A stretch of DNA of 64,000 bases from Selaginella moellendorffii (Eukaryota; Plantae; Lycopodiophyta). The notes under the pieces are model-generated. The model was not told the DNA's origin. It saw only the letters and a list, made by a program, of their open reading frames with translations, and ran no database searches. Shown in pieces: positions 541 to 28,190 of this stretch; the stretch's first letter is position 1; every line of letters begins with the position of its first letter. Made by a program: the position numbers and the translations under genes. The DNA lies in assembly GCF_000143415.4 (NCBI RefSeq), contig NW_003314305.1:236139-300138 (forward strand). The letters run 5' to 3'.

Positions 541-1116
541 CTAGAACTGGGGACGGCCCTGCTGAAACCGGGAGGTGAAACTTTGCCCTCCGCATTCTAG
601 CTCGACCTTCATGCCATCCCGAAAGCTGAGAACATACTCGGAGCACAAGTTTATGAGCTCGTGGCCGAGGACGAAATCGTGGCGAGCCAGATTCATGACC
701 GCGAAATCCAGGCATCCCTTGAACCCGCCCTCGAGCTCAAACTCGAGGTCCGCCACTTTGCGATTGCTGGGCTGCGCGGTGCTCCCCACAAGCAGGTTGA
801 CGCTAAACGGACGGCACAGCGAAGTCGTCAGCCCGAGGCGGTTGACGGCGTTGACCGACACGAAGCTGTCCGAGTTCTGGCTGAGCATGAAGGACGCCGG
901 GCGGCCGTTGACCGTGCCCCGGAGCCAGCGGCCATAGTCGTCGTCGCCCATGAAGGACACCAGGCACGTCTTGGCCAGCGGCGCCGCCGTGAGCTCGGCT
1001 ACCAAGTCTTGAGCCTCGTTCAAGCTGCCTGGCTGCTTGCCCGCCACGAACTCGGCCACCTCAGCGTTGGGCACCGACTGGAGAAAGCTGCATACCTCGA
1101 GAGGAAGAAGCTCCAT
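541..1116 (-). CDS. Ty3/gypsy-derived Gag C-terminal + retropepsin-like protein lacking the catalytic Asp (type a, 191 aa from first suitable ATG), copy 1
   Basis: SFLQSVPNAEVAEFVAGKQPGSLNEAQDL resembles the Gag capsid CTD; LRGTVNGRPASFML-SQNSDSFVS and HDFVLGHELI match the retropepsin pattern but D-S/T-G is absent. Start codon uncertain. Confidence 0.7.
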   Translation of the reverse strand: MELLPLEVCSFLQSVPNAEVAEFVAGKQPGSLNEAQDLVAELTAAPLAKTCLVSFMGDDDYGRWLRGTVNGRPASFMLSQNSDSFVSVNAVNRLGLTTSLCRPFSVNLLVGSTAQPSNRKVADLEFELEGGFKGCLDFAVMNLARHDFVLGHELINLCSEYVLSFRDGMKVELECGGQSFTSRFQQGRPQF

Positions 1117-1916
1117 TTCTTGCCCTAGGACCGTTTCAGGAGAAGAATATACCCGTGATTTTAAAACCCTGCTTGGGGCCCTGGTGCTCATCTCAAGATG
1201 TAGAGCCGCATCCAAATTCTCAGGGCTGTGCTTGAGATATCCCGGCACTACACTCTTTTCCAGGTCCTCAAGAACGTTAGCAGGGAATATTCGCACCTTG
1301 TTCTTTTCGGCCCAAACCATGGTACGTGTACATTTGTTTTCCTTGATGATCTTTTTCATAGTTTCTGAGCCTTGTAGCTTGATCTTATTCACCACCTGAA
1401 CAACAATGACAGAAAAATACGACATCGGTCTCTAGAAGGTTTGCTATCAGTTTTCAGATCTTCTTACTAGGTGATTGTCATGGGCTATGTTCCTCGAGGC
1501 GAGGGCACAGACGCAATGCCAGTGCATGACATCGGCGAGCACCTGGTACTCTTTCTCGGGAGGACGTGGTAGAGGGAGCGGAGGTTCAGGCCCTCTCCTA
1601 GAGTCTCACACCTGGATACGTCTTGGAGCTTGCAGCTTGATGCCGTCGCGAACGTGATAGTTGATGTGGATGAGCTGGCCAGCCTAAGGTCACAGTTCCA
1701 AAACACCATCAGGATATTATTCCATTGATGGTTTCATAGGTGCTTTTATTGATGAGGCTGTTCCCAAAGCTTATATAGCTTCGTCTTCTAAAATGATAGC
1801 CGAGCTTGGGAAACGTGAAAACCATGAGAATCATAACTTCTGGACGATGTCCAAGCCCTTTCATCACCTGCAAGTTAACAGAACTGAAAAGAGAAGCGAG
1901 CAGAAACTCACGGCGT

Positions 1917-2461
1917 TTACTCCTCAAACTGGGGACGACCCTGGTGGAACGGCGAGGTAAACTTCTGCCCACCGCCTAATCCAAAGTCGACCTTGATGAT
2001 ACCATCATCGTCCTTGTAAATCGCCTCGGAGCACACCTTCAAGAGCTGGTGCCCGAGGACGAAATCGTGGTGAATCAGATCCATAACTGAAAAATCCATG
2101 CTGAAACTTGAGTTTGCGAACTTTGCGATTGTGGGGCGGAGAGGGGTTCCCGCCCAGGAACTTGACGCAAAACGGGCGGCACAGCGTCGTGGTCGGCCCC
2201 AGCCTATTGACCGCATTGACCGACACGAAGCTGTCCGAGTTCTGGCTCAGCATGAAGGATACCGGGCGGCCGTTGACCAGTTGCCGTAGTCCTCGTTGCC
2301 CATGTAGACACCCAGCACCGCTTGGCCAGCGGCGCCGCCGTGGCCACCACGGCTTGGGCCTCGCTCACGCTGCCTGGCTGCTTGGCCGCCACGAACTCGG
2401 CCACCTCGGTGTTTGACACCGACTGGAGATAGCTGTGTACCTCGAGAGAAAGAAGCTCCAT
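1917..2461 (-). pseudogene. Gag-CTD/retropepsin-like paralog type b, frameshifted
   Basis: Homology is split over three frames (2204-2461, 2005-2253, 1917-2216) by small deletions relative to the copy at 18748. Confidence 0.8.
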
Positions 2462-3173
2462 TTTTTCCTAACTTTTCTTGCCCTACTGGGAGAAGAATAT
2501 ACTCAACAGAAAGTTTGCGCTATAGATGCCAAGCCAGGAGCATAAACAAAGAGCGAAAGAGTGAGGAGTGAAGCTTTCTTTCAGTAAAAGCAATACACTT
2601 TCCTGGTTGTTCTTGGACAAGGAAGTCCAGCTTAAATTAACAAATCTCACATGTACAAAACTATTAACAGTATATAATTTTTGGAACCTGTATCTAAAAT
2701 ATACTAAAATATTTTGGAATATTCTACTATCTAAAAATGTTATTCATTTTGTATCTATATAAACTTTCTTAACCACTTACTAGCATATTCTAAGTTAATC
2801 TGATGTTTATAATTTATAACACAAGATTAATTTTATTACAAGCTATCAATATGATTAATAAATAATAAGCACTCAAATTATTTAATTTTTAATTTTTGAG
2901 AAGAGAACCAATCATTTATGACATCTCCCACAATGATATCGCTCCATTCGGTACAAACACGTCCCATACAAGAACTTCCCACGTCCTCCAGTTTATCTGA
3001 GTCACTAAGAAATAAGAAACAAGAAAAGAATTGCTTTCTACCTGATTAGCAGAATGGTGTTGCTTGACGTCTTCAATCCCTTTGTTGGTAGCATGAAGGC
3101 AGAGCAAAAACAGCAGAGCAAATTTATTGATATTTCATCTTTATTTCATACATAACTATTTTCATATCGATCT

Positions 3174-3677
3174 TTAGTAAGGTTTCTGGCCTCCAACGTT
3201 GCCTGGTGGATCATAGTTGCAACTCACAATGTACGCATTCGCACCATTGCATTTCACTCGAGCGCATCCCACTCGCACCGAGTTCCTCCACACAACCTGA
3301 GTGTAGTGCCCGCACACCTTGCCCGGAGCACAAGTGTTTGATGCGTAATTGTAATCAGCCTTTTCCTTCACCCATTCTTTGACTGCGTCCGTGGCTGGAG
3401 GCGGCGCCAAGCCATCGCTCCCCCTCCACATATACAAGTTCTCGCCATACGGCCCGCTAGAGTGGACCATTTGACAGCTCGCCTGGAGAGTCGAGGCCCA
3501 GTTTTGCGCATACGAGGCAACTTGCTCGTTCCAAACCAGCGGAGGAACATTAACAGCAGATCTCGCGGAGTTGTGTGCGTCGACAAGATCACTCTCCGTG
3601 CTTGCAAGACCTGCGTGGAGAAATCCAGTGCCATAGATCACAAGAACCATTAGAGTTGCACGAAGAACTCCCCCCAT
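3174..3677 (-). CDS. PR1: Pathogenesis-related protein 1 (CAP/SCP domain), secreted
   Basis: Hydrophobic signal peptide; HNSAR, GENL, CGHYTQVVW, GCA, CNYDPPGN motifs; C-terminal CAPE-like PPGNVGGQKPY. ATG at 3677. Confidence 0.95.
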   Translation of the reverse strand: MGGVLRATLMVLVIYGTGFLHAGLASTESDLVDAHNSARSAVNVPPLVWNEQVASYAQNWASTLQASCQMVHSSGPYGENLYMWRGSDGLAPPPATDAVKEWVKEKADYNYASNTCAPGKVCGHYTQVVWRNSVRVGCARVKCNGANAYIVSCNYDPPGNVGGQKPY

Positions 3678-4071
3678 AGCGATCAAACTAGAACGCGGAT
3701 TGCACAACTAAAAAGTATAGGAGCACGAAAACTTACTGTGGGAGACCATCCTCTTATAAAGCAGAGCGTAGGCATGGGGATCTCCCTTTGGATACGGCAA
3801 ATACATTTCTTCTTAATGTTAGTCTTGCTTGCTCGCACGAGATTTTCCACGTCGTTATGCTCGTTTTTTTCTTGATCAATGACAAGAGATGGGTCAGTGA
3901 CTTGACTTAACCGGCATGACCTTCCAGAATTCCACAAGATGGTTGCTGGGAACTTAAATAGTTCTATAGATCATAGATCATCAAGAATAAAGATGACCTA
4001 CAAATTAACGAATATACCAAGAAAAGTATGCAAGTATATGATTCTCTTCGATTAGGTCATAGATAGAGAAC
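3678..4071. promoter_or_regulatory. Divergent PR-1/vWA intergenic promoter (repeated in each unit)
   Basis: 394 bp between the ATGs; TATA-like CTTATAAA at ~3753; clustered TGAC cores including a W-box TTGACT at 3902-3907; ACGT core at ~3849. Confidence 0.5.
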
Positions 4072-5768
4072 ATGGCGGCAGGGTTTGAGAATTCCGAGGT
4101 AAGCAGCACGCTCCAGGAAGACGAGATCGTCCATCTTAGCGAGGAGCTAGGCTGGCTAGTGATTGGCGAGCAGCCGGAGCTCAAGATCATCGGCGAGGTC
4201 GACAAGATCAAGGCCAGGGGAGAAGAAGAAGAAGAAGAAGAGCGATGCTATACAGCGCTCGTCCATCTCAAAGCTCCCAAAAGCGATAGCTCCGATGATG
4301 CTCGCGCCCCGGTCGATCTGGTCACAGTGCTGGACGTGAGCGGCAGCATGCGCGGCCAGAAGCTGGAGCTCGTCAAGACCGCCATGGAGTTTGTGATCCG
4401 GAATTTGCGACAGCAGGACCGCCTCGCGATCGTCTCCTTCTCGGACGAGCCCAAAGTCCATCTCGGTCTCAAGAGGATGACTTACGACGGTCGAGAGGCG
4501 GCACTCAGTGCAGTGGAGAAGCTGCGGACCCTGGGAGGGACCGAGATCCGTCCGGGGCTAAAGGCTGGATTCGATCTTCTCTCGCGGCGCAGGAACAGGA
4601 ACCCGGTGTCGAGCATCATGCTTCTCTCGGACGGGATGGACAATGCGATCACGTTCAAGCGATGCAAAGTTCTTCCAGTGGATTCCTACCTCGAGGACTG
4701 CAGTGAGCGGGTTCCAGTGCACACTTTCGGATTTGGAAGTGACCATGATCCCGAGGCCATGCTCAGCATCGCCGAGGCCACAGGCGGCAGCTTTTGCTAC
4801 GTGCAAGAGGAGTCCACCGTCCAGCACGCGTTTGCTCAGTGCATTGGCGGGCTGCTTAGCGTGGTGGCACAGGAAGTGGAGGTCTGCATCGAGGCGAGTG
4901 GCGGAGCGAAGATCAGGAGTGTGGAAGCCACCGCCGGAACGACGGCCATGGATGGCGATCGAGCTGCGACAGTGAAGCTTGGATCCTTGTACGCGGAAGA
5001 GGAGAGAGATATCCTGGTGGAGCTCTTGCTGCCTAGCTCTGACTCGAGCTCTTCGTCGATGGAACTTCTCAAAGTTGGGGGGAGCTTTCGAGACCCCGGG
5101 CAGTCGAACAAGACCCAGCAGTTTGCAACTTCGAGCTTGGTAATCCAGGAGCTCAAAGCTGGCGAAGAAGAGGAGGCGGTAAGGATTGAGGTGGACAGGC
5201 AGAAGAACCGTGTGAGTGCCTCGAAGGCGATGGCTGCCGCTCGTAAGCTGGGGTCTGGCAGCTTGGCATCGGCAAAGCAAGCGCTGGTGGACGTGAAGGA
5301 AAAGATTGAGAGCTCCCGAGCGTTTGGAGCTGGCGATGGCTTGTCCAAGAGATTGGTGAGAGAACTCGACGAGCTGATCCAGTGCATGAAGGAGGATTAT
5401 TACCAGTTTGGGGGGCATGCCATGCTGCTTGCCAAGGGGAATTCTCACTGCAACCAGCGAGCTTCGTACCAGCCAACGTACCAGCCAACATGTAAGACAT
5501 TTTGGACAGCTCTTTTGTGTTCTAACTCTTGTGAACTCTCTTCTCTCTCTTTGAATCAGCCCGTTTTGCCGGTTGCAGCAGCAACAACGTACCTCTCTGT
5601 GGCAGCACCAACCACAGCAGCAGCAACGTAGCGTTCGCAAACTTTAGCAAATTCGATTTCCACGCTAGAAGTTCCTTGGCACAAGACGATGAGCCAGAGA
5701 CATCCTATGAAACGTCGGCGATGGTAGATATGCTGGACAAGTCTAAGAAGTTCAAGAGTAATAGATAA
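4072..5768 (+). CDS. vWA-domain protein of the plant WAV3/EDA40-like RING-vWA family but lacking RING, copy 1; exons 4072-5491, 5560-5768
   Basis: MIDAS motifs DVSGS, GGT and LSDG; HCNQRAS. Removing the GTAAGA..AATCAG intron restores the family-typical YETSAMVDML C-terminus. Confidence 0.88.
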
Positions 5769-6213
5769 ATCTAGATTTTTCTATTTGATGCATGTTGCGG
5801 TGTGTTGGTGGAAACATGGAGAAGTTAAGCAAAAGAGCAGAATCACAGAACTTACAGATCACTGGAAACCTGGTGAAAGCCCTTGCAGCTGTGGCATCCT
5901 AGTTGATGTTGCAAGCATAAACAGTAAGATAAAGGGAGATAACCAGCTTTATACTTGAGAATGGCATCACCATCTTTAAGCAAGCAACCTCTCCATTTTG
6001 TGATCAAACTAAAGATGGAGAGAGCTGGATTTTGTGAGCTTTTGATAAGCTGATTCATTGCAGCGTTTTCTCGAAATCAAATACATGGCGATGGCGTTCC
6101 AGGACAAAACGTAATAGTTATAATAGATACCCTTGTTCAGTAAAGGTATAAAGTTCGAAACCTTCGCCCACACGGCAAGTAGCTAGCTACGTAAATAGCT
6201 CTCTTCGATTACA

Positions 6214-7925
6214 ATGGCGGCAGGATTTGAGAAATCCGAGGTAAGCAGCATGGATCTCACGCTCCAGGAAGACGAGATCGTCCATCTTAGCGAGGAGCTA
6301 GGCTGGCTAGTGATTGGCGAGCAGCCGGAGCTCAAGATCATCGGCGAGGTCGACAAGATCAAGGCCAGGGGAGAAGAAGAAGAAGAGCGATGCTATACAG
6401 CGCTCGTCCATCTCAAAGCTCCTAAAAGCGATAGCTCCGATGATGCTCGCGCCCCGGTCGATCTGGTCACAGTGCTGGACGTGAGCGGCAGCATGCGCGG
6501 CCAGAAGCTGGAGCTCGTCAAGACCGCCATGGAGTTTGTGATCCGGAATTTGCGACAGCAGGACCGCCTCGCGATCGTCTCCTTCTCGGACGAGCCCAAA
6601 GTCCATCTCGGTCTCAAGAGGATGACTCACGACGGTCGAGCCGCGGCACTCAGTGCAGTGGAGAAGCTCCGGAGCTTGGGAGGAACAGAGATCCGTCCAG
6701 GGCTAAAGGCTGGATTCGATCTTCTTTCGCGGCGCAAGAATAGGAACCCGGTGTCGAGCATCATGCTTCTCTCGGACGGGATGGACAATGCGATCACGTT
6801 CAAGCGATGCAAAGTTCTTCCAGTGGATTCCTACCTCGAGGACTGCAGTGAGCGGGTTCCAGTGCACACTTTCGGATTTGGAAGTGACCATGATCCCGAG
6901 GCCATGCTCAGCATCGCCGAGGCCACAGGCGGCAGCTTTTGCTACGTGCAAGAGGAGTCCACCGTCCAGCACGCGTTTGCTCAGTGCATTGGCGGGCTGC
7001 TTAGCGTGGTGGCACAGGAAGTGGAGGTCTTCATCGAGGCGAGTGGCGGAGCGAAGATCAAGAGTGTGGAGGCCACCGCCGGGATGACAGCCATGGATGG
7101 AGATCGAGCTGCGACGGTGAAGCTTGGATCCCTGTATGCGGAAGAGGAGAGAGATATCCTGGTGGAGCTCTTGCTGCCTAGCTCCGACTCGAGCTCTTTG
7201 TCGATGGAACTTCTCAAAGTTGAGGGAAGCTTTCAAGACCCTGGGCATTCGAACAAGACCCAACTGCTTGCAACTTCGAGCTTGGTGATCCAGGAGCTCA
7301 AAGCTGGCGAAGAGGAGGAGGCGACAAAGATCGAGGTGGACAGGCAGAAGAACCGTGTGAGTGCCTCGAAGGCGATGGCTGCCGCTCGTAAGCTGGGGTC
7401 TGGCAGCTTGGCGTCGGCAAAGCAAGTGCTGGTGGACGTGAAACAAAAGATAGAGAGCTCCCGAGCGTTTGGAGCTGGCGATGGCTTGTCCAGGAGATTG
7501 GTGAGAGAACTCGACGAGCTGATCCAGTGCATGAAGCGGGATTATTACCACTCCGAGGGACATGCTGTGCTGCTTGCCAAGGGGAATTCTCACTGCAACC
7601 AGCGAGCTTCGTACCAGTCGAGAGGTAAGACATTTTGGACAGCTCTTTTGTGTTCTAACTCTTGTGAATTTTGTTACTTAAATCAGCACGGAAGCGCCCC
7701 GCCTTTTTCGAAGGTGGCAGAGGTGGCAGAGGGGGCAGAGGTGCTGGTGCTAAACCACGGAGCAATGCAGCTCCTTGTCTTGGTGCTAGTGCTAAAAGAA
7801 TGAGCACTGGTGGGGTTCTTTCAGAAAGCCTGGTACAAGAGACATCCTCAGATGATGAGTCGTACCGAACGTCGGCGATGGTAGATATGCTGGACAAATC
7901 CAAGAAATTCAAGAGTAAGAGATAG
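6214..7925 (+). CDS. RING-less vWA protein copy 2; exons 6214-7624, 7687-7925
   Basis: As copy 1; exon 2 encodes an RGG-rich segment and YRTSAMVDML. Confidence 0.88.
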
Positions 7926-8089
7926 ATCTAGATTTCAAGTTGACAAAGCTCGAACTTGACAAGCATAAGTGTGTTCCGAACTCCAAAGTAAGCGTTTCTG
8001 GCCCAACACGATCCAGATCCAGCCATTCCCCATCCAATGGTCAGGTCAACGACAAGAAATAGTCAACGACCCATACCTAAGCGTCCGAC

Positions 8090-8235
8090 GTGAAAGCACT
8101 GGGCCTTCTTATGGAGTTTGCATTGCTATCGTTTTCTGGACTTTTCTCCTCAATCAGTTTGCAGAGCCAGATGCTCGAAGCCCTGATGCTGCACTCCACA
8201 GTCAAGATGATGGGAGCTCCCATCAATGCTGATTA
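8090..8235 (+). pseudogene. Decayed relic of the small gene at 29.4-29.9 kb (also at ~15420-15565 and ~22810-22950)
   Basis: Shares GCCAGATGCTCGAAGCCCTG and GGGAGCTCCCATCAATGC with exon 3 of that gene, in the opposite orientation. Confidence 0.7.
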
Positions 8236-8494
8236 AACTGGAGGGTTTTCAAAGCTCTACTTCAGAAATCTGGTGTGGACAATCAGCCCATACAATTACC
8301 TTTGCTATGTTCCAGAACAAGAAGCTTATTGTCTATCAATCTAAGGAGGACATGTAACTTCTTGCTCCTTCTGTCACATGCATTTTTAACAAAAGTAGTC
8401 TTCTTCAGAGAAACAAATAGATCTTGTTCAATTCAGAGAGGAGAGGTAGTAATTGTGGATGAAACCGACTGTATTAAATATTTATACACATTGT

Positions 8495-9514
8495 CTAGTT
8501 TGTTATGCTAGCAAGAAGCATGTAAGGACTTGCTCTAAGGAGCTTTTGATCCTGTTGTAAGTAGAAGATGTTACTGGCTACTCGTGCCCCACATTCCACA
8601 TCGTTCTGTAGTCTACAGGCACTCAGCAAACATCCCCATGAAACGTCATCGGGAGTGAATGGCATGCTGTGAATCAACTCTTCTGCCTCGTGAATCCTTC
8701 CCATTCTCGCCAGAATGTCTATCATGCATCGGAAGTTTTCCACTGACGGTCTAAAGTCGTGATCAAAAGCCATGGATCTAAACCACGACAGCGCCTCCTG
8801 GAGCATTCCTTCGTGGCTAAACGCAAACAAAATCCCTGTGACTGTCGTCTCCTCGCAGTTGACACCTTCAACGCACATCCTGAACGATAGCTCCAACGCA
8901 GTTTGGATGTAACCTTTTTGAGCATAAGCAACGATCATAGCATTCCAGGAAACCGTGTTTTTCTCATGCATTTGGTGGAAGATTTCTTTTGCTTCGAAAA
9001 GATGGCCATTATGGGCATGCGTTACGATCAGAGCATTCAAGACTGATGTTTCTTGAGAAGCGTTCCAAGGGATTAAATCTCTGGCTTGAGTCACGTTTCC
9101 ATTCTCTCCACAAGCGATTACCATGCTTGTCCATGACAGATTATTGCTCGCCGGGATTTTCTCGAGCAAAGCTTTTGCGTGATCTAGATATCCAGCAGTG
9201 GCTAAAGCTGAAATTGCAGCGTTCCAACACATAAGGTCACGCATGGGGCACCTCTCAAAGTAAACTTTCGCTTCTTCCAACTTCCTCTTGGACACGAGCA
9301 CACACACCATTGAAGTCCAGCTTATCACGCTCCACCCCGGCATTTTCCAGAATGTCGTTGTGGCCATGCAAAGATTACCAGAATCCGCGTTTGCTTGAAG
9401 TATAGTCGTCCACGAAGCCAAGTTTCTCTGAGGCATGTCGCCAAAAAGCTCGCAAACTTTCTCAGTATTAAGATTCTCGCGGTACATCTGAAGCATGATT
9501 TTCTGGTTGGGCAT
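8495..9514 (-). CDS. 5'-truncated PLS/E-type PPR gene, chimeric at the duplication junction (possible pseudogene)
   Basis: C-terminal half of the 632-aa PPR; a new in-frame ATG (MPNQK) comes from the junction sequence. Confidence 0.65.
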   Translation of the reverse strand: MPNQKIMLQMYRENLNTEKVCELFGDMPQRNLASWTTILQANADSGNLCMATTTFWKMPGWSVISWTSMVCVLVSKRKLEEAKVYFERCPMRDLMCWNAAISALATAGYLDHAKALLEKIPASNNLSWTSMVIACGENGNVTQARDLIPWNASQETSVLNALIVTHAHNGHLFEAKEIFHQMHEKNTVSWNAMIVAYAQKGYIQTALELSFRMCVEGVNCEETTVTGILFAFSHEGMLQEALSWFRSMAFDHDFRPSVENFRCMIDILARMGRIHEAEELIHSMPFTPDDVSWGCLLSACRLQNDVECGARVASNIFYLQQDQKLLRASPYMLLASITN

Positions 9515-10017
9515 GAGCAATGGCCACGGGATGGGTTCAAGAGGTGAAAGAGAATCTAATGCCAAAGTTGCAATGCTGATTCAGGCCTATTTAGAGCCAT
9601 CCAGGCCAAATAGATTACAATTCTTATATTCTTTGTCCGCTCGGGGAGAAAGAAAAAAAAAGCATATGTTGATCTGCAAACCAATGCTTTTGATTTCATT
9701 GGATTTTTAATCACAGCCCAGTGCGTTCTTAATGGCACAGAGGAGACAGGCCTGGAAGCAGCTGGGGGCGATTCTCCAGGACCAGAAAGCGTGACTAATC
9801 AAAGAGCCACGTAAAGAGAAACTCAGAGAACTATACGAAACAATGGAAAACATGGAAAGACGATGGAAACAAGCTCTGCGATGAAACAATGGAAAACAAT
9901 GGAAAAAACACAACATCCAAGAACATCTTCTCGACGATTCATGACCCTCGACAACCTGGAGAGTCTACATGAGAACTCAGAAAACGACGGAAACTTCATT
10001 GTAAACTTACGGATAAC

Positions 10018-10593
10018 CTAAAACTGGGGACGGCCCTGCTGAAACCGGGAGGTGAAACTTTGCCCTCCGCATTCTAGCTCGACCTTCATGCCATCCCGAA
10101 AGCTGAGAACATACTCGGAGCACAAGTTTATGAGCTCGTGGCCGAGGACGAAATCGTGGCGAGCCAGATTCATGACCGCGAAATCCAGGCATCCCTTGAA
10201 CCCGCCCTCGAGCTCAAACTCGAGGTCCGCCACTTTGCGATTGCTGGGCTGCGCGGTGCTCCCCACAAGCAGGTTGACGCTAAACGGACGGCACAGCGAA
10301 GTCGTCAGCCCGAGGCGGTTGACGGCGTTGACCGACACGAAGCTGTCCGAGTTCTGGCTGAGCATGAAGGACGCCGGGCGGCCGTTGACCGTGCCCCGGA
10401 GCCAGCGGCCATAGTCGTCGTCGCCCATGAAGGACACCAGGCACGTCTTGGCCAGCGGCGCCGCCGTGAGCTCGGCTACCAAGTCTTGAGCCTCGTTCAA
10501 GCTGCCTGGCTGCTTGCCCGCCACGAACTCGGCCACCTCAGCGTTGGGTACCGACTGGAGAAAGCTGCATACCTCGAGAGGAAGAAGCTCCAT
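10018..10593 (-). CDS. Gag-CTD/retropepsin-like protein type a, copy 2
   Basis: Same 191-aa translation as copy 1. Confidence 0.7.
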   Translation of the reverse strand: MELLPLEVCSFLQSVPNAEVAEFVAGKQPGSLNEAQDLVAELTAAPLAKTCLVSFMGDDDYGRWLRGTVNGRPASFMLSQNSDSFVSVNAVNRLGLTTSLCRPFSVNLLVGSTAQPSNRKVADLEFELEGGFKGCLDFAVMNLARHDFVLGHELINLCSEYVLSFRDGMKVELECGGQSFTSRFQQGRPQF

Positions 10594-11393
10594 TTCTTGC
10601 CCTAGGACCGTTTCAGGAGAAGAATATACCCGTGATTTTAAAACCCTGCTTGGGGCCCTGGTGCTCATCTCAAGATGTAGAGCCGCATCCAAATTCTCAG
10701 GGCTGTGCTTGAGATATCCCGGCACTACACTCTTTTCCAGGTCCTCAAGAACGTTAGCAGGGAATATTCGCACCTTGTTCTTTTCGGCCCAAACCATGGT
10801 ACGTGTACATTTGTTTTCCTTGATGATCTTTTTCATAGTTTCTGAGCCTTGTAGCTTGATCTTATTCACCACCTGAACAACAATGACAGACAAATACGAC
10901 ATCGGTCTCTAGAAGGTTTGCTATCAGTTTTCAGATCTTCTTACTAGGTGATTGTCATGGGCTATGTTCCTCGAGGCGAGGGCACAGACGCAATGCCAGT
11001 GCATGACATCGGCGAGCACCTGGTACTCTTTCTCGGGAGGACGTGGTAGAGGGAGCGGAGGTTCAGGCCCTCTCCTAGAGTCTCACACCTGGATACGTCT
11101 TGGAGCTTGCAGCTTGATGCCGTCGCGAACGTGATAGTTGATGTGGATGAGCTGGCCAGCCTAAGGTCACAGTTCCAAAACACCATCAGGATATTATTCC
11201 ATTGATGGTTTCATAGGTGCTTTTATTGATGAGGCTGTTCCCAAAGCTTATATAGCTTCGTCTTCTAAAATGATAGCCGAGCTTGGGAAACGTGAAAACC
11301 ATGAGAATCATAACTTCTGGACGATGTCCAAGCCCTTTCATCACCTGCAAGTTAACAGAACTGAAAAGAGAAGCGAGCAGAAACTCACGGCGT

Positions 11394-11938
11394 TTACTCC
11401 TCAAACTGGGGACGACCCTGGCGGAACGGCGAGGTAAACTTCTGCCCACCGCCTAATCCAAAGTCGACCTTGATGATACCATCATCGTCCTTGTAAATCG
11501 CCTCGGAGCACACCTTCAAGAGCTGGTGCCCGAGGACGAAATCGTGGTGAATCAGATCCATAACTGAAAAATCCATGCTGAAACTTGAGTTTGCGAACTT
11601 TGCGATTGTGGGGCGGAGAGGGGTTCCCGCCCAGGAACTTGACGCAAAACGGGCGGCACAGCGTCCTGGTCGGCCCCAGCCTATTGACCGCATTGACCGA
11701 CACGAAGCTGTCCGAGTTCTGGCTCAGCATGAAGGATACCGGGCGGCCGTTGACCAGTTGCCGTAGTCCTCGTTGCCCATGTAGACACCCAGCACCGCTT
11801 GGCCAGCGGCGCCGCCGTGGCCACCACGGCTTGGGCCTCGCTCACGCTGCCTGGCTGCTTGGCCGCCACGAACTCAGCCACCTCGGTGTTTGACACCGAC
11901 TGGAGATAGCTGTGTACCTCGAGAGAAAGAAGCTCCAT
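11394..11938 (-). pseudogene. Gag-CTD/retropepsin-like paralog type b, frameshifted
   Basis: Same deletions as the unit 1 copy. Confidence 0.8.
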
Positions 11939-12642
11939 TTTTTCCTAACTTTTCTTGCCCTACTGGGAGAAGAATATACTTAACAGAAAGTTTGCGCTAG
12001 GAGCATAAACAAAGAGCGAAGGAGTGAGGAGTGAAGCTTTCTTTCAGTAAAAGCAATACACTTTCCTGGTTGTTCTTGGACAAGGAAGTCCAGCTTAAAT
12101 TAACAAATCTCACATGTACAAAATTATTAACAGTATATAATTTTTGGAACCTGTATCTAAAATATACTAAAATATTCTGGTTTATTTTACTATCTAAAGA
12201 TTGTTATTCATTTTGTATCTATAATTTATAAACTTTCTTAACCACTTACTAGTATATTCTAAGTTAATCTGATGTTTATAATTTATAACACAAGATTAAT
12301 TTTATTACAAGTTATCAATGTGATTAATAAATAAAAAGCACTCAAATTATTTAATTTCTAATTTTTGAGAAGATAACCAATCGTTTATGACATCTCCCAC
12401 AATGATATCGCTCCATTCGGTACAAACACGTCCCATACAAGAACTTCCCACGTCCTCCAGTTTATCTGAGTCACTAAGAAATAAGAAACAAGAAAAGAAT
12501 TGCTTTCTACCTGATTAGCAGAATGGTGTTGCTTGACGTCTTCAGTCCCTTCGTTGGTAGCATAAAGGCAGAGCAAAAACAGCAGAGCAAATTTATTGAT
12601 ATTTCATCTTTATTTCATACATAACTATTTTCATATCGATCT

Positions 12643-17333: not shown

Positions 17334-17909
17334 CTAAAACTGGGGACGGCCCTGCTGAAACCGGGAGGTGAAACTTTGCCCTCCGCATTCTAGCTCGACC
17401 TTCATGCCATCCCGAAAGCTGAGAACATACTCGGAGCACAAGTTTATGAGCTCGTGGCCGAGGACGAAATCGTGGCGAGCCAGATTCATGACCGCGAAAT
17501 CCAGGCATCCCTTGAACCCGCCCTCGAGCTCAAACTCGAGGTCCGCCACTTTGCGATTGCTGGGCTGCGCGGTGCTCCCCACAAGCAGGTTGACGCTAAA
17601 CGGACGGCACAGCGAAGTCGTCAGCCCGAGGCGGTTGACGGCGTTGACCGACACGAAGCTGTCCGAGTTCTGGCTGAGCATGAAGGACGCCGGGCGGCCG
17701 TTGACCGTGCCCCGGAGCCAGCGGCCATAGTCGTCGTCGCCCATGAAGGACACCAGGCACGTCTTGGCCAGCGGCGCCGCCGTGAGCTCGGCTACCAAGT
17801 CCTGAGCCTCGTTCAAGCTGCCTGGCTGCTTGCCCGCCACGAACTCGGCCACCTCAGCGTTGGGCACCGACTGGAGAAAGCTGCATACCTCGAGAGGAAG
17901 AAGCTCCAT
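17334..17909 (-). CDS. Gag-CTD/retropepsin-like protein type a, copy 3
   Basis: Same 191-aa translation as copies 1 and 2. Confidence 0.7.
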   Translation of the reverse strand: MELLPLEVCSFLQSVPNAEVAEFVAGKQPGSLNEAQDLVAELTAAPLAKTCLVSFMGDDDYGRWLRGTVNGRPASFMLSQNSDSFVSVNAVNRLGLTTSLCRPFSVNLLVGSTAQPSNRKVADLEFELEGGFKGCLDFAVMNLARHDFVLGHELINLCSEYVLSFRDGMKVELECGGQSFTSRFQQGRPQF

Positions 17910-18747: not shown

Positions 18748-19377
18748 TTACTCCTCAAACTGGAGACGCCCCTGGTGGAACGGCGAGGTAAACTTCTGCC
18801 CACCACCTAATCCAAAGTCGACCTTGATGATACCATCATCGTCCTTGTAAATCGCCTCGGAGCACACCTTCAAGAGCTGGTGCCCGAGGACGAAATCGTG
18901 GTGAATCAGATCCATGACTGAAAAATCCATGCAGCCCTTGTACCCGCCCTCAAGCTGAAACTTGAGTTTGCGAACTTTGCGATTGTGGGGCGGAGAGGGG
19001 TTCCAGCCCAGGAACTTGACGCAAAACGGGCGGCATAGCGTCGTGGTCGGCCCCAGCCTATTGACCGCATTGACCGACACGAAGCTGTCCGAGTTCTGGC
19101 TCAGCATGAAGGATACCGGGCGGCCGTTGACCGTGCCCCGGAGCCAGTTGCCGTAGTCCTCGTTGCCCATGTAGCACACCCAGCACCGCTTGGCCAGCGG
19201 CGCCGCCGTGAGCTTGGCCACCACGGCTTGGGCCTCGCTCACGCTGCCTGGCTGCTTGGCCGCCACGAACTCGGCCACCTCGGTGTTTGACACCGATCGA
19301 GAGAAAGAATCTCCATTCTTTCCCAACTTTTCTTGCCCTAGGTGTTCATTACTGGGACCCAACGGAAGTTTGATCAA
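18748..19377 (-). pseudogene. Gag-CTD/retropepsin-like paralog type b; protease-like domain open but start region frameshifted
   Basis: Open from SVSNTEVAEF to QFEE*, but a ~19-nt deletion near 19296 puts the homologous ATG out of frame. It could still be expressed from an upstream exon. Confidence 0.55.
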
Positions 19378-23194: not shown

Positions 23195-25093
23195 CTAGTT
23201 TGTTATGCTAGCAAGAAGCATGTAAGGACTTGCTCTAAGGAGCTTTTGATCCTGTTGTAAGTAGAAGATGTTACTGGCTACTCGTGTCCCACATTCCACA
23301 TCGTTCTGTAGTCTACAGGCACTCAGCAAACTTCCCCATGAAACGTCATCGGGAGTGAATGGCATGCTGTGAATCAACTCTTCTGCCTCGTGAATCCTTC
23401 CCATTCTCGCCAGAATGTCTACCATGCATCGGAAGTTTTCCACTGACGGTCTAAAGTCGTGATCAAAAGCCATGGATCTAAACCACGACAGCGCATCCTG
23501 GAGCATTCCTTCGTGGCTAAACGCAAACAAAATCCCTGTGACTGTCGTCTCCTCGCAGTTGACACCTTCAACGCACATCCTGAACGATAGCTCCAACGCA
23601 GTTTGGATGCAACCTTTTTGAGCATAAGCAACGATCATAGCATTCCAGGAAACCGTGTTTTTCTCATGCATTTGGTCGAAGATTTCTTTTGCTTCGAAAA
23701 GATGGCCATTATGGGCATGCGTTACGATCAGAGCATTCAAGACTGATGTTTCTTGAGAAGCGTTCCAAGGGATTAAATCTCTGGCTTGAGTCACGTTTCC
23801 ATTCTCTCCACAAGCGATTACCATGCTTGTCCATGACAGCTTATTGCTCGCCGGGATTTTCTCGAGCAAAGATTTTGCTTGATCTAGATATCCAGCAGTG
23901 GCTAAAGCTGAAATTGCAGCGTTCCAACACATGAGGTCACGCATGGGGCACCTCTCAAAGTAAACTTTCGCTTCTTCCAACTTCCTCTTGGACACGAGCA
24001 CACACACCATTGAAGTCCAGCTTATCACGCTCCACCCCGGCATTTTCCAGAATGTCGTTGTGGCCATGCAAAGATTACCAGAATCCGCGTTTGCTTGAAG
24101 TATAGTCGTCCACGAAGCCAAGTTTCTCTGAGGCATGTCGCCAAAAAGCTCGCAAACTTTCTCAGTATTAAGATTCTCGCGGTACATCTGAAGCATGATG
24201 TTGTAGCACACAGTGTTCCTGCATGGAATTCTTTCAAAGGTATCGTTCGCCTTTTTATGCTGCCCTCCACGGGCATATGCTGATATGAGCGACGTCCAAA
24301 CCACAACATTCCTCTCCAGAAGCCGCTGGAACATTGACATGAGCTCATCGATCCTTTTCTTCTCACCGTAGAGAAGAAAAAGGGGAACATACGACGCTTG
24401 GTTGTGTTGCGGTTGCTTCTCAAGCATCACTTCTGCTTCCTCCAAGCATCCAGCTTGGGCAAATCCACAGACCATCGAGTTCCAAGACACCACATTCCTT
24501 TGTGGCATCAAATCAAACGTCTCTCGAGCTCTGGCCATAAACAATCCTTCGTAAGAATACGCGGCCACCATAGCCGACCAGCTTATCGTGTTTCCCTCTG
24601 CCATCTTTAAAAAGAAGCTCTCGGAGGTTTGCAAATCTCCGACCTGGGCATATGCAGTGATCATTATTGACCACGACACAACGTTCCTCTCGCTTATATT
24701 GTCGAAAATATCACGAGCTTGGACGATTTTTCCATGCTCAGTGAGAACTTTGAGCACCGTGTTTGTGGAGATCACGTCCCAACAAGGCATGGATTCGAAG
24801 AAACTCTCGTAGCAACAATCATCGAGCTCTCCAAGTGCCGACAGGACAATGTTCCACGACACCACACTCCGCTGCTCCATGGAATCGAAGAAACGCTTTG
24901 CTTGCTCCATGAATCCATTGTGCGTGTAAGCCGTGAGCATGGCGTTCCAGGACAAAACGTCCGGATCTTCCATGCTCTCAAAAACCCGGCGAGCTCTTGA
25001 AACATCGCCTCTTCTTCCATGGATCCCGATCAACTGGTCGCTCCAAAACTTGTTACTCCTGTTAAATTGCGGCCCTACCTTCTTCAAGATCAT
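23195..25093 (-). CDS. PLS-class pentatricopeptide repeat protein with E-like C-terminus, no DYW domain
   Basis: Intronless 632-aa ORF with repeated ~31-aa VVSWN.M...YA motifs; ends MPFTPDDVSWGSLLSACR...SPYMLLAS. Confidence 0.95.
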   Translation of the reverse strand: MILKKVGPQFNRSNKFWSDQLIGIHGRRGDVSRARRVFESMEDPDVLSWNAMLTAYTHNGFMEQAKRFFDSMEQRSVVSWNIVLSALGELDDCCYESFFESMPCWDVISTNTVLKVLTEHGKIVQARDIFDNISERNVVSWSIMITAYAQVGDLQTSESFFLKMAEGNTISWSAMVAAYSYEGLFMARARETFDLMPQRNVVSWNSMVCGFAQAGCLEEAEVMLEKQPQHNQASYVPLFLLYGEKKRIDELMSMFQRLLERNVVVWTSLISAYARGGQHKKANDTFERIPCRNTVCYNIMLQMYRENLNTEKVCELFGDMPQRNLASWTTILQANADSGNLCMATTTFWKMPGWSVISWTSMVCVLVSKRKLEEAKVYFERCPMRDLMCWNAAISALATAGYLDQAKSLLEKIPASNKLSWTSMVIACGENGNVTQARDLIPWNASQETSVLNALIVTHAHNGHLFEAKEIFDQMHEKNTVSWNAMIVAYAQKGCIQTALELSFRMCVEGVNCEETTVTGILFAFSHEGMLQDALSWFRSMAFDHDFRPSVENFRCMVDILARMGRIHEAEELIHSMPFTPDDVSWGSLLSACRLQNDVECGTRVASNIFYLQQDQKLLRASPYMLLASITN

Positions 25094-25505: not shown

Positions 25506-28190
25506 TCATGAGCAAGCCATGGTCTTCACAGCAACGGGGCTGGACACCGTGTGTCGCCCATCCGTCCAAGTTATGGATGCAAACTGCCATCTCTCGCTGC
25601 CGGAGCTGCTCGAAACAGTAACAGTGAAGGCCAGCGTTGCTCCTGGCGAGAATGTGAGCGTCGTTGGCTCCACTCTCACGCTCAGCGTCGATGGTGTCTT
25701 GACTGTTACTTTGTAAGTCGAGGAGGACGAAGAAGAATCCACGCTCGTCAGGTACCTGGTAGCGGTCTGTGTGCCGCTCAATCTCGGGAAGGCGATGGAA
25801 GGATAGTTGAGGTTGGAATTCTTCATGGAGCAACTCGTGTTCTTCTGTCCTGCGATCATCCTGACTTTGCTCTCACTGTAGCCAGTGGCACAGAGATAGG
25901 CGACGTAGTCGGAGGGTGTTGCGTCGTAGACCAGTCCTGGACTTAGAGACCTCAAGGGATCGATCTGGCCGGAGCCGTAAGCAAATGGATTGCTCAGGCT
26001 TCCATCATAGTCGAGTATGCCGTCGTTTTGAGTTGTCGCTGGAGATTCAAAGGCTTGTATGAGGCTGGGGAAGAGAAAGGTGGTAGAGAGTTACCTGTGG
26101 TCATGATCGCCGATCTTAGAGCCGCGGGACTCCAAGAAGGATACGCAGACTTTAGCATGGCCAAGGCTCCCGCGACGTGAGGACACGCCATGGAGGTTCC
26201 GGAGGCGAAGTTATACTTGACAAAAACGGGCTTGTTCGTGTCGTAGTTCTCATAGTACGCTGGAACGATATCCGGCCAGGCCGCAAGGATGTTTACTCCT
26301 GGAGCAGTAATATCAGGCTGCAACAAAGACCAATGATCTTGATAATGAATGGCTAGGTGGTACCTTGATTATATCTTCGCTGATGGAGTTTGGACCTCTT
26401 GAAGAGAATCCGGCAACTACTGGAGCTGGACTGGAAGTCTCTGCCACTGTCGGTGTCAGTGTAGCGACTGGTGAGGTGGTGCTGTTCATGTAGGATAACA
26501 GCTCGACTCCCACGGCTGTTTTCACGATGGTCGTAGGCAAGGGGAAGTAGCTAGCGAGATCTGCGTGGAAGTCGTTTATGAGAATGGCACCAGCGGCATT
26601 GTTCTTCTGCAACCATGTCACGATTGCTTTCGTGGAAACATAGTCGGGATCGAACTCGCAGACGACGATCTTGTTCTCTACTTGCTTGGGATTTAGACTG
26701 TCTGGATCACAGGTGCTGCAAAGTAAGCTATGAGCCACTTTTGAAAGAACAAAAAAGAGAGAGTTTAGACCACTTTCACCTGGCTGCTGAGGCATGGATA
26801 GATTCATTAGCAGGAATGGAAGAGCCAAGGACGAGGCTGTAAGGTGATTCCTTCTGAGCTTGAAAGCTCAAGGCCGTTCCCTGCGCAGTGAAGTAGTAGA
26901 AAGGTGATGAGAAAGAAAAGCCAAGGTTTTGCTCACTCGTAGAGTCTTTCCATCTCCAAGATAGACGTCGGACGCAATGGACCTGTCAATGGTGCTTGCT
27001 CCGACCGTGAAAATCCAAGGGGCCGAGTTGTAGACGGACGATTCGTCGGGACCCGAATTCCCAGCGGAGCAAACCACAGTGATGTTGTGCTGGATGGCAT
27101 GGAAGGCTCCAATCGCGATGCCATCCTCGTCGTAGCTCCGCGGCAAGGTACCAAGCGAAAGCGATAGTATATCCACCCCGTCGTCCATAGCGTCATCAAA
27201 GGCCTTGAGGACGTCTGCAATGGGACAGCCATCGATCCCACACACTTTGTACACTGCGAGCCTGGCCGATGGAAGTCCACCCCTGGCTGTTCCACTGCCA
27301 ACACCCTTCATGCTCGCGTTGGAGACGACGCTGCCAGCCGTGGTGGATGCAGCGTGTGATCCGTGGCCTATTTCATCTCTTGCGCTCTCCGCGTTGTAGA
27401 AACGAGCTCCGATGATCTTGCTGCTCCATAAATAATTCGTTTTCTTTCGTCTTTAGAACGGTACTATCGTGAAACTTACTTGTTGCATTTCACGGGATTC
27501 ACACCGGCGTTGTTGCAGAATCCTTTCCATCGGCTGGGAGGAGATGACATTCCATCATTGCTGAAACTTGCAGACTCTGGCCATATACCTTCAGGAAAGA
27601 GAGAGCAACTTGATTGATATATATCACTTTTGTCAACTCTTGAATCTATGTACCCGTGTCCATCACGCCAACGATGACATCGGCTCCCGCTCCAAGTCTG
27701 CGTCTCGAGTATGAGAGACCCGTCGAAAACGTTTCCAGGAAGTCCCAGGACCGCGTTGTATGCAGCTGCAGAGTTTTGCTCGGGAACACACTGACCACGT
27801 CCCGCATTCCTGCAATAGCTTTTGCCTGCTTCGGGGTCATCCTGGCAGCAAATCCATCAAATCCATGCTTGTAGCTGTACACGATCTCAGGGGACTCGAC
27901 TTCACTGTCGTGTAAGTTTTAAAGTCAGTCCGGGCTATACTTTGGAGCACGATAACTTCTTGCCTGCTTTTGACAGAATCGAGAATCTTGCCGTGTCTGT
28001 GGACCAGCTGCAAACTGTGGCGACTCCCTTTTCCACCGAGGTACACGATATAAATCTGCGAAAACAGAACCAAGTAGTAAATATATGTAGAAAGATGGCC
28101 GTGAAGTACCTGACGCTTGTCCTCGATGCCTGCTGCCTTGTTCCACGAGACGATGCTTAGAGCTATGAAAAAAAGACCAGAGATGGCCAT
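25506..28190 (-). CDS. SBT: Subtilisin-like serine protease (plant S8A subtilase), multi-exon
   Basis: Signal peptide; I9 prodomain ([27 protein letters not shown]); catalytic DTG, HGSH and GTSMACP; [13 protein letters not shown]; Fn3-like tail NLNYPSI. Confidence 0.95.

What the first reader, a model, noticed from the sequence alone, without database searches (positions are those of the whole stretch)
541..1116. Conserved Gag-CTD plus catalytically dead retropepsin: candidate domesticated retroelement gene
Seen: a capsid-CTD-like helix pair joined directly to a retropepsin-like domain, with no zinc knuckle, RT, integrase or LTR nearby. The expected D-S/T-G-A site reads SQNSDS in both diverged paralog types (a and b). 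The 191-aa type a protein is identical in all three units and is GC/CpG-rich, unlike the eroded retroelements at 42-64 kb. Established: retropepsins are obligate dimers that need this Asp. Inference: a retained pseudo-protease that could be a decoy or scaffold, or could poison retrotransposon protease or capsid assembly.
Basis: partly seen in the sequence, partly recalled or inferred. Interest (0 to 1): 0.75.

Follow-up and report, generated by a model that had tools for sequence, protein, structure and literature searches.

The report
Retrotransposon-derived dead-protease gene in Selaginella
A small clubmoss (Selaginella) gene left over from a jumping-gene: it keeps the fold of a retroviral-type protease and a stub of the capsid protein, has lost the catalytic residue, yet has been preserved by selection, so it is a credible but unproven candidate for a retroelement gene taken over by its host.

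Summary
The window is Selaginella moellendorffii scaffold GL377609.1. A 191-aa ORF sits on the minus strand at 541-1116. It recurs with an identical protein at 10018-10593 and 17334-17909.

What it is:
- The core folds as a retropepsin; the best structural matches are Ddi1 RVP and the EIAV and HIV proteases.
- LSQNSDS stands where D-S/T-G-A should be, so it cannot be an aspartic protease.
- It is an N-terminally truncated paralogue of a full-length Gag plus dead-protease gene, SELMODRAFT_447725.
- No LTR, RT, integrase or zinc knuckle lies nearby.

Evidence for selection: a versus b gives omega about 0.24 (LRT p about 1e-9), so the protein stayed under constraint after losing the Asp.

- The three identical copies come from a very recent tandem triplication of a PPR-VWA-PR1-b-a segment. 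The other scaffold carries one unit. Identity is therefore not evidence of constraint.
- All three b copies carry frame-disrupting deletions.
- The "Gag CTD" is a remnant of about 40 aa.
- No orthologue outside this species was found, and no expression data were available.

The decoy or dominant-negative mechanism is inference only. Verdict: partly supported.

The parts
541..1116 (-). Type a ORF, unit 1: 191 aa plus stop. Gag C-terminal remnant plus pseudo-retropepsin.
973..1089 (-). Residues 10-48 of a: two-helix remnant of the Ty3/gypsy Gag C-terminal region. It aligns with residues 99-165 of the paralogue P0010.
637..969 (-). Residues 50-160 of a: the retropepsin-fold domain. It includes the conserved h-D-x-V-L-G motif (HDFVLGHE).
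865..885 (-). LSQNSDS, in the place of the catalytic h-D-S/T-G-A loop. No Asp at the catalytic position.
1117..1425 (-). In-frame upstream extension that gives the annotated 294-aa model. GC 45%, CpG o/e 0.59. Broken by indels in unit 3 and on the other scaffold, so probably not coding.
10018..10593 (-). Type a ORF, unit 2. Protein identical to unit 1.
17334..17909 (-). Type a ORF, unit 3. Protein identical to unit 1.
1926..2467 (-). Type b, unit 1: pseudogene. Relative to a and b3 it has deletions of 6, 1, 13 and 23 nt, three of which shift the frame. It keeps the ancestral ATG.
11403..11944 (-). Type b, unit 2: pseudogene with the same deletions as b1.
18748..19377 (-). Type b, unit 3: open through the protease-like domain (66% aa identity to a). 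A 19-nt deletion puts the ancestral ATG out of frame, and an upstream TAG removes the alternative ATG used on the other scaffold.
8495..9565 (-). Context: the 3' half of a PPR gene, duplicated with the unit. It marks the unit junction near 9496 (and near 16812), which shows segmental duplication rather than transposition.
3174..3707 (-). Context: the CAP/PR-1 gene of unit 1. Further copies lie in units 2 and 3.
4072..5631 (+). Context: the VWA-domain gene of unit 1. A second copy starts at 6214, and units 2 and 3 each have one.

Best explanation
Type a is an N-terminally truncated paralogue of a small Selaginella moellendorffii gene family. The family derives from the gag-pro region of a Ty3/gypsy retrotransposon. 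Its full-length member is SELMODRAFT_447725 (Gag plus protease-like domain, 329 aa).

Shown:
- Type a encodes about 190 aa: a two-helix stub of the capsid C-terminal region followed by a complete retropepsin-fold domain.
- The catalytic Asp-Ser/Thr-Gly is replaced, so it cannot act as an aspartic protease.
- The Asp was lost before a, b and the full-length paralogue diverged.
- The coding sequence then stayed under purifying selection, with omega about 0.25.
- The three identical copies in the window are passengers of a very recent tandem triplication of a segment of about 7.3 kb carrying a PPR fragment, VWA, PR-1, b and a.

Inferred:
- The retained activity is non-catalytic and uses what the fold keeps: the retropepsin dimer interface and peptide-binding groove.
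- The most likely mode is formation of inactive homo- or heterodimers, with the family's own members or with the protease domain of related Ty3/gypsy Gag-Pol. That would give a binding, scaffold or dominant-negative role.
- The Gag stub adds at most a weak capsid contact.
- Whether type a is still functional today is about even odds.
For: Homology and fold:
- The a+b profile hits P0003 at E 6e-28 and RVP_2 proteins at 3e-10 to 9e-4.
- hhalign of a/b against P0010/P0003 gives probability 99.8, collinear across the Gag remnant and the protease domain.
- The AlphaFold model's matches in the PDB and BFVD are retropepsin folds only.
- A profile search of PDB sequences hits DDI1 RVP at E 7e-4.

Dead site shared by a, b and P0003/P0010.

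Selection:
- NG86 omega for a-b is 0.47, bootstrap CI 0.32-0.70.
- A codon-model fit gives omega 0.24, LRT against omega=1 p 1e-9.
- The two alleles of the full-length paralogue give omega 0.25, p 0.02.
- a and b changed at similar rates relative to the outgroup, 5 against 9 changes, so both were constrained for most of their history.
- In a neutral simulation the ORF stays open in only 2.5% of runs at K=0.25 per site.

Not in a mobile element:
- No LTRs or inverted repeats around a-b or around P0010.
- The two loci share only protease-coding DNA.
- The neighbours are ordinary host genes.
- The unit junction lies inside a PPR gene.

Gene-like composition: CpG o/e 1.0 and GC3 0.82, also seen in P0010.
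Against: - All b copies in the window carry frame-disrupting deletions.
- One allele of the full-length paralogue has an insertion of about 350 nt in Gag.
- a on the other scaffold differs by 3 nonsynonymous and 1 synonymous change, so there is no sign of current constraint, though the counts are tiny.
- No orthologue was found in any other species.
- No transcript or protein evidence is available, and no paper mentions these genes.
- Pfam does not recognise a itself.
- The Gag remnant is too short to be a folded CTD.
- Dimerisation and any interaction with retroelement proteins are untested.
- The excess of synonymous differences among recent copies could reflect the mutability of CpG at third positions. 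b shows the same excess.
Confidence: 0.55

Rival explanations
1. Recently dead relic. The family was once constrained, as a host gene or otherwise. Type a is now a young pseudogene in waiting, like b. Its ORF is intact only because little time has passed and GC-rich DNA rarely throws up stop codons.
For: - All three b copies are broken.
- The P0003 allele is interrupted.
- a differs between scaffolds by 3 nonsynonymous and 1 synonymous change.
- No orthologues or transcripts were found.
- 1.65% of mononucleotide shuffles of the 576 nt are fully open in some frame, and 19% of neutral simulations keep the ORF at K=0.1.
Against: - All four known a copies are intact, while neighbouring b copies have acquired two independent sets of lesions.
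- The ATG has a favourable context, A at -3 and G at +4.
- Omega since the a/b split is 0.24. Constraint therefore lasted for most of a divergence of about 0.5 synonymous changes per site.
Confidence: 0.3
2. Pieces of a non-autonomous mobile element family that codes only Gag and protease. On this view omega below 1 reflects selection within a transposing lineage, not host function.
For: - The sequence derives from Ty3/gypsy.
- The window holds LTR-type elements elsewhere.
- Unannotated genomic copies could not be counted with these tools.
Against: - No LTRs, inverted repeats or shared flanks at either locus.
- a and b are adjacent, in the same orientation, with the same truncation boundaries. 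That fits local tandem duplication.
- Only two loci appear in the annotated proteome.
- CpG is not depleted, unlike the retroelement region of the window.
- No other retropepsin-like sequence lies in the window.
Confidence: 0.1
3. Still a protease, using a displaced acidic residue. D83 in S-D-S is conserved as S-D-N in the full-length paralogue and could stand in for the canonical Asp.
For: An Asp is conserved four to five residues after the canonical position in a, b and P0003/P0010.
Against: - Established retropepsin chemistry needs the Asp of the D-T/S-G loop from each monomer at the dimer axis.
- The Gly of that loop is missing as well.
- Active relatives carry Thr, Ala or His at the D83 position.
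Confidence: 0.03

Closest known systems
SELMODRAFT_447725 / SELMODRAFT_438917 (P0010 / P0003), uncharacterised S. moellendorffii proteins that UniRef labels as Ty3 capsid-like / Retrotransposon gag domain-containing
   Same: - About 50% identity over the protease-like domain, with a collinear Gag C-terminal region.
- The same loss of the catalytic D-S/T-G.
- No zinc knuckle, RT, integrase or LTRs.
- GC3-rich and CpG-rich.
- Lies among ordinary host genes.
   Different: P0010 keeps the whole Gag (Pfam Ty3_capsid E 2e-8) and a longer Gag-protease linker. Type a starts at the equivalent of about residue 105 and lacks the capsid N-terminal lobe.
Mammalian Ty3/gypsy-derived gag-pro genes PEG10 and RTL1/PEG11 (PMC3406341)
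   Same: Host genes derived from the gag-pol region of a Ty3/gypsy element. They have lost LTRs, RT and integrase and keep Gag plus a retropepsin-like domain.
   Different: PEG10 and RTL1 retain the DSG active site (PMC3406341). They are conserved across mammals and have known developmental roles. Here the site is dead, the Gag is a stub, and conservation beyond one species is unknown. No sequence relationship was detected.
Ddi1/DDI2 RVP domain and ASPRV1/SASPase (cellular retropepsin-fold proteins)
   Same: These are the best structural matches of the model: 3s8i, 4rgh and 5yq8, E about 1e-5. They are single-domain retropepsin folds that work as dimers.
   Different: They are catalytically competent, with D-S/T-G present, and they carry other domains (UBL/UBA). 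Sequence similarity is only marginal (E 7e-4 with a profile).
Gag-derived restriction factors: Ty1 p22/p18 (PMC4599808, PMC4551931) and a domesticated Ty1-prime Gag restriction factor (PMC10951436)
   Same: N-terminally truncated Gag proteins that act without catalysis, interfering in trans with assembly of the parental element. This is the working model proposed for type a.
   Different: They derive from Ty1/copia, consist of the Gag C-terminal half only, have no protease-like domain, and their function has been demonstrated. For type a this is an analogy, not a tested property.
Plant co-opted gag genes Crtg8-Crtg11 (Wang and Han 2021, PMC8321522)
   Same: Retrotransposon gag-derived plant genes, defined by synteny or host-congruent phylogeny together with selection.
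   Different: They are described as gag genes; the words protease and Selaginella do not occur in the paper's main text. Two of them arose in early angiosperms. None came up in the profile search.

Membership tests
Retropepsin (peptidase family A2; Pfam RVP_2, gag-asp_proteas, Asp_protease_2) | Retropepsin beta-barrel fold | tested here: met
   The AlphaFold model has core pLDDT 74-90. The top Foldseek hits in the PDB and BFVD are all retropepsins: Ddi1 RVP, EIAV and HIV protease, probability 1.0.
Retropepsin (peptidase family A2; Pfam RVP_2, gag-asp_proteas, Asp_protease_2) | Catalytic D-T/S-G-A motif | tested here: not met
   The position reads L-S-Q-N-S-D-S in a and b, and A-S-N-S-S-D-N in P0003/P0010. 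It is therefore a homologue of the fold, not a member of the enzyme family.
Retropepsin (peptidase family A2; Pfam RVP_2, gag-asp_proteas, Asp_protease_2) | Score above the Pfam gathering threshold | tested here: not met
   Type a has no Pfam hit at E<=1. Its paralogue P0003 just passes RVP_2, 21.0 bits against a cut-off of 20.3. The link to the family is transitive, through the profile search.
Retropepsin (peptidase family A2; Pfam RVP_2, gag-asp_proteas, Asp_protease_2) | Homodimer formation | not testable with these tools
   Only monomer prediction was available.
Ty3/gypsy Gag (Pfam Ty3_capsid, Retrotrans_gag) | Two-lobed capsid (NTD plus CTD) recognised by the family profile | tested here: not met
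   Type a has no Pfam hit. Only residues 10-48 align to the C-terminal part of P0010's Gag. P0003/P0010 themselves meet the criterion: Ty3_capsid E 2e-8.
LTR retrotransposon copy | Flanking LTRs and RT/RNase H/integrase coding capacity | tested here: not met
   - No direct repeats flank a-b or P0010.
- The unit's genes are CAP, VWA and PPR.
- The two loci share no flank homology.
- Target-site duplications and PBS/PPT were not searched, because no termini exist.
Co-opted (domesticated) retrotransposon gag gene, by the criteria of PMC8321522 | Orthologues in shared synteny across taxa, or a gene tree congruent with the host tree | tested here: inconclusive
   No homologue from another species was found in the word searches or in the 1.84-billion-protein profile search, apart from distant active or orphan RVP proteins. 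Coverage of other lycophyte genomes in these libraries is unknown. Synteny was confirmed only between the two scaffolds of the same assembly.
Co-opted (domesticated) retrotransposon gag gene, by the criteria of PMC8321522 | Evidence of natural selection on the coding sequence | tested here: met
   - Omega for a-b is 0.24, LRT p 1e-9.
- Omega for P0003-P0010 is 0.25, p 0.02.
- NG86 gives 0.47, CI 0.32-0.70.
- Current constraint on a alone is not resolved.
Co-opted (domesticated) retrotransposon gag gene, by the criteria of PMC8321522 | Expression | not testable with these tools
   No transcriptome data were accessible. No Logan-derived members occur in the protein clusters. This says nothing either way.

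The most novel reading that the evidence does not exclude
Selaginella carries a lineage-specific family of host genes made of Gag plus a catalytically dead retropepsin. On this reading they restrict Ty3/gypsy retrotransposons in one of two ways: by forming inactive heterodimers with the element's protease, or by capping Gag lattices. One truncated member is being amplified as part of a PR-1/VWA defence-gene cluster. That would make it a plant counterpart of Ty1 p22 or Fv1-type restriction, built on a pseudo-protease.
Probability: 0.12. Interest if true: 0.75.

Novelty: new variant of a known kind. Interest (0 to 1): 0.45.

Why it matters
Few retrotransposon gag co-options are documented in plants. 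PMC8321522 reports four in plants and says none had been documented before; the words 'protease' and 'Selaginella' do not occur in its main text. A retropepsin fold kept under purifying selection after losing its catalytic Asp would be a clear pseudo-enzyme. Because retropepsins work only as dimers, a dead monomer is a ready-made dominant-negative inhibitor. That makes host control of Ty3/gypsy elements in an early-diverging vascular plant directly testable. If type a proves unexpressed, the locus is still a tidy example of an old TE-derived ORF carried along in a very recent tandem amplification of defence-type genes.

Tried and rejected
- **Direct searches with type a.** Pfam gave nothing at E<=1 except a chance ARC6 match. 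phmmer against PDB sequences gave nothing.
- **Word-index searches.** Queries with a, P0003 and P0004 each returned only themselves.
- **AlphaFold of the full-length paralogue.** P0010 with a 2-row alignment failed (pLDDT 38). Its Gag fold therefore rests on Pfam only.
- **Gag N-terminal remnants.** A search upstream of a and b with P0010 residues 1-190 at E<=50 found only the short collinear C-terminal match (E 0.16-0.4).
- **Other retropepsin-like sequences.** A six-frame HMM search of the window found only one weak hit, at 43705-43863, E 0.014.
- **Identity of the three a copies as evidence of constraint.** Rejected, because neighbouring non-coding stretches are also identical between units in a mosaic pattern.
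- **Synonymous to nonsynonymous counts among recent copies.** Suggestive (4:3 for a), but b gives similar ratios (4:2 and 4:1), so this was not used.
- **Promoter and poly(A) motif inspection.** Uninformative.
- **Literature search on the four locus tags and two UniProt ids.** No paper found.
- **Joined or repaired sequences.** The annotated two-exon model P0003 and the fused b-a models P0002 and P0008 were used only as the tools returned them. Broken b copies were compared as DNA or as separate frame pieces.

Full report
**Source and setting**

The exact 294-aa product of the annotated ORF is on record only in GCA_000143415.2, scaffold GL377609.1. Cluster mates and paralogues are named SELMODRAFT_... 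[Selaginella moellendorffii]. The window is therefore nuclear DNA of this lycophyte.

The first 24 kb is a tandem array. Each unit holds the following:
- the 3' half of a PPR gene
- a VWA-domain gene (two in unit 1)
- a CAP/PR-1 gene
- type b
- type a

The units are 96-100% identical. The unit junction lies inside the PPR gene, near 9496 and 16812. A second scaffold, GL377567.1 (locus L004), is about 96% identical and collinear but carries a single unit. The triplication is therefore a very recent segmental event, not transposition.

**Checking the observation**

- 541-1116(-) is an ATG-to-stop ORF of 191 aa.
- Identical proteins are encoded at 10018-10593 and 17334-17909. They differ at three nucleotides, all synonymous.
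- The copy on L004 is intact, with three conservative replacements and one synonymous change.
- The annotated 294-aa model adds 103 upstream codons (1117-1425). That stretch is AT-richer and CpG-poorer, and it is broken by indels in unit 3 and on L004. I take the 191-aa ORF as the conserved unit.
- GenBank also holds models that fuse b and a through small introns (P0002, 456 aa; P0008, 421 aa). In units 1 and 2 such a model has to skip b's frameshifts.

**Is it retropepsin-like?**

Direct searches fail:
- Pfam finds nothing.
- PDB sequences give nothing.
- The word-index search finds only the query itself.

Because the protein was left open, I ran the full HMMER scan with an a+b profile. It returned 7 hits among 1.84 billion representatives:
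- the two Selaginella a/b models
- SELMODRAFT_438917 (P0003) at E 6e-28
- an orphan protein from a Logan assembly (P0004) at E 3e-10
- three Adiantum retroelement fragments at E about 1e-4

Pfam on these hits gave the following:

| Hit | Pfam result |
|---|---|
| P0003 | Ty3_capsid 2e-8, Retrotrans_gag 4e-5, RVP_2 21.0 bits (cut-off 20.3) |
| P0004 | RVP_2 1.5e-22 |
| Adiantum proteins | RVP_2 1e-11 to 1e-13 |

Further support:
- An AlphaFold model of a from a 10-row alignment has a confident core (blocks 61-160: 74, 84, 83, 90, 54, 63, 83, 81, 79, 63) and disordered ends.
- Its Foldseek hits in the PDB are exclusively retropepsins. They include human DDI1/DDI2, the Leishmania, Toxoplasma and yeast Ddi1 RVP domains, EIAV, HIV and SIV proteases (E down to 1e-5, probability 1.0, TM on target 0.5-0.68).
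- BFVD gives caulimovirid, retroviral and giant-virus retropepsins.
- A profile search of PDB sequences hits DDI1 at E 7e-4.

The fold claim is confirmed.

**The active site**

In the alignment with the active Adiantum sequences (V-D-S-G-[YC]-S-[TA]-N-F), a and b read M-L-S-Q-N-S-D-S-F. P0003/P0010 read V-A-S-N-S-S-D-N-F. The three P0004 repeats read S-S-S-S-H-S-F in one and [SL]-G-S-T-H-S-F in the other two. No Asp occupies the catalytic position, and in a and b the Gly is gone too. Since a, b and P0003/P0010 all lack it, the loss predates their divergence.

**The Gag part and the full-length paralogue**

- P0003's allele on another scaffold is P0010 (SELMODRAFT_447725). It is a single intact 329-aa ORF at L005:10001-10990, made of Gag, a linker and the dead protease domain.
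- It lies between an oxidosqualene-cyclase gene and a PDI-type thioredoxin gene.
- hhalign of a/b against P0010/P0003 gives probability 99.8. Residues 10-155 of a match residues 99-296 of P0010, collinear through the Gag C-terminal region and the protease domain, with a shorter linker in a.
- The Gag stretch alone is weak: 32 aa, 34% identity, E 0.4. It corresponds to two predicted helices.
- No remnant of the capsid N-terminal lobe lies upstream of a or b.

Type a is therefore a 5'-truncated paralogue, and "Gag CTD" should read "Gag C-terminal remnant".

**Mobile-element context**

- There are no direct or inverted repeats around a-b, around the L004 copy, or around P0010, other than the a/b homology itself. 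That homology coincides with the ORF plus about 40 nt upstream.
- The a/b and P0010 loci share only 305 nt of protease-coding DNA, at 66% identity.
- No other retropepsin-like sequence is in the window.
- The neighbours are ordinary genes.

A genome-wide census could not be run.

**Selection**

| Comparison | Method | Result |
|---|---|---|
| a vs b3 | NG86 | dN 0.24, dS 0.50, omega 0.47 (bootstrap 0.32-0.70) |
| a vs b3 | codon model (F3x4, kappa fitted) | omega 0.24, LRT vs omega=1 p 1e-9 |
| a vs b3, excluding the N-terminus | codon model | omega 0.25, p 3e-8 |
| two alleles of the full-length gene | codon model | omega 0.25, p 0.02 (6 synonymous, 7 nonsynonymous) |
| a or b vs P0010 | codon model | synonymous sites saturated, still far from neutral |

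- With P0010 as outgroup, a and b carry 5 and 9 derived residues. The difference is not significant, so both were constrained for most of their history.
- In neutral simulations the ORF stays open in 2.5% of runs at K=0.25 per site and in 19% at K=0.1.
- Composition agrees. The ORF has GC 62%, GC3 0.82 and CpG o/e 1.0, sharply bounded by flanks at GC 43-45% and CpG o/e 0.6. P0010 has the same composition. The retroelement region at 42-64 kb has CpG o/e 0.26-0.65.

**What weakens the domestication reading**

1. The identity of the three a copies is uninformative. Units 1 and 2 are identical across b, the spacer and the 5' part of a. Units 2 and 3 are identical across the 3' part of a and about 900 nt downstream.
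2. b is decaying. b1 and b2 share deletions of 1, 13 and 23 nt. b3 and the L004 copy share a different lesion, a 19-nt deletion that disconnects the ancestral ATG. In the window an upstream TAG also removes the substitute ATG used on L004.
3. The P0003 allele of the full-length gene is interrupted by about 350 nt. The insertion begins with TTTAGGG repeats and contains local inverted duplications. The annotation treats it as an intron.
4. Among recent copies, the excess of synonymous changes is as strong in b as in a, so it cannot show current constraint.
5. No relative from another species was found, other than distant RVP proteins. No paper mentions these genes. Expression could not be examined.

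**Mechanism**

Shown:
- a folded retropepsin-type domain without the catalytic Asp
- kept by selection after that loss
- not part of a recognisable element

Established knowledge: retropepsins are active only as homodimers, with one Asp contributed by each subunit.

Inferred:
- Any retained function is non-catalytic. It most plausibly works through dimerisation or the substrate groove.
- Candidates are self-association, pairing with the full-length paralogue, or formation of dead heterodimers with the protease domain of related Ty3/gypsy polyproteins.
- The nearest functional analogies are truncated Gag inhibitors such as Ty1 p22 (PMC4599808, PMC4551931) and a domesticated Ty1-prime Gag (PMC10951436).
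- The placement in an amplifying PR-1/VWA cluster may be incidental.
- I put about 0.55 on [quoted passage not shown], about 0.3 on "a recently dead relic", and about 0.12 on the specific anti-retroelement role.

**Comparison and novelty**

- The kind is known: host genes derived from the gag-pro region of Ty3/gypsy elements. PEG10 and RTL1 are examples, and both retain DSG (PMC3406341).
- The plant gag co-options described so far are Crtg8-11. In that paper's main text the words 'protease' and 'Selaginella' do not occur (PMC8321522).
- A Gag-plus-pseudo-protease family in a lycophyte, with a truncated member, is a new variant of that kind.
- By that paper's criteria, selection is met, orthology or synteny across taxa is untested, and expression is untested.

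Nothing here concerned human sequence, toxins, or viruses of animals, people or crops.

Noticed in passing
window 46079-47605 vs 58943-60481; window 48812-49945 vs 54929-56061: There are two nested pairs of long direct repeats: 1.5 kb at 98.1% identity and 1.13 kb at 99.8%. They look like the LTRs of one element of about 14.4 kb with a 7.25-kb element inside it. No ORF of 150 aa or more lies between the inner repeats. The LTRs are therefore young although the coding interiors are gutted or absent.
   Followed up: partly
window 1-24200; L004 (GL377567.1) 5270-12387: The PPR-fragment/VWA/PR-1/b/a segment is present three times in the window but once on the roughly 96%-identical second scaffold. 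Unit 1 also carries an extra VWA copy (4072-5768 and 6214-7925). This is copy-number variation of a PR-1/VWA cluster between haplotypes or recent paralogous regions.
   Followed up: partly
L002 10059-10410 (GL377569.1): The Gag ORF of SELMODRAFT_438917 is interrupted by about 350 nt that is absent from the other allele. The insertion starts with (TTTAGGG)n telomere-type repeats and contains inverted local duplications of 9692-9758. The GenBank model treats it as an intron.
   Followed up: partly
L003 906-2630 and L006 1604-3379 (Logan SRR33208242 / SRR33208241): An orphan protein (P0004/P0011) is made of at least three tandem RVP_2 domains, none of which has Asp at the catalytic position (two keep the Gly). 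It is a second, unrelated-looking case of dead retropepsin domains, here arrayed in one chain. The source organism is unknown.
   Followed up: partly
window 23195-25093 (-) and 28387-28968 (-); 26313-26828 (-): A full-length PPR ORF of 632 aa is the parent of the truncated PPR copies in the array. A further PPR fragment and a subtilase-like ORF fragment lie downstream. This matches the gene order S8 subtilase, then PPR, on L004.
   Followed up: no
window 34255-36231 (-): A 658-aa ORF rich in Glu, Lys and Ala, which looks like a long coiled coil, lies next to a proline-rich 329-aa ORF at 36678-37667. Neither was examined.
   Followed up: no
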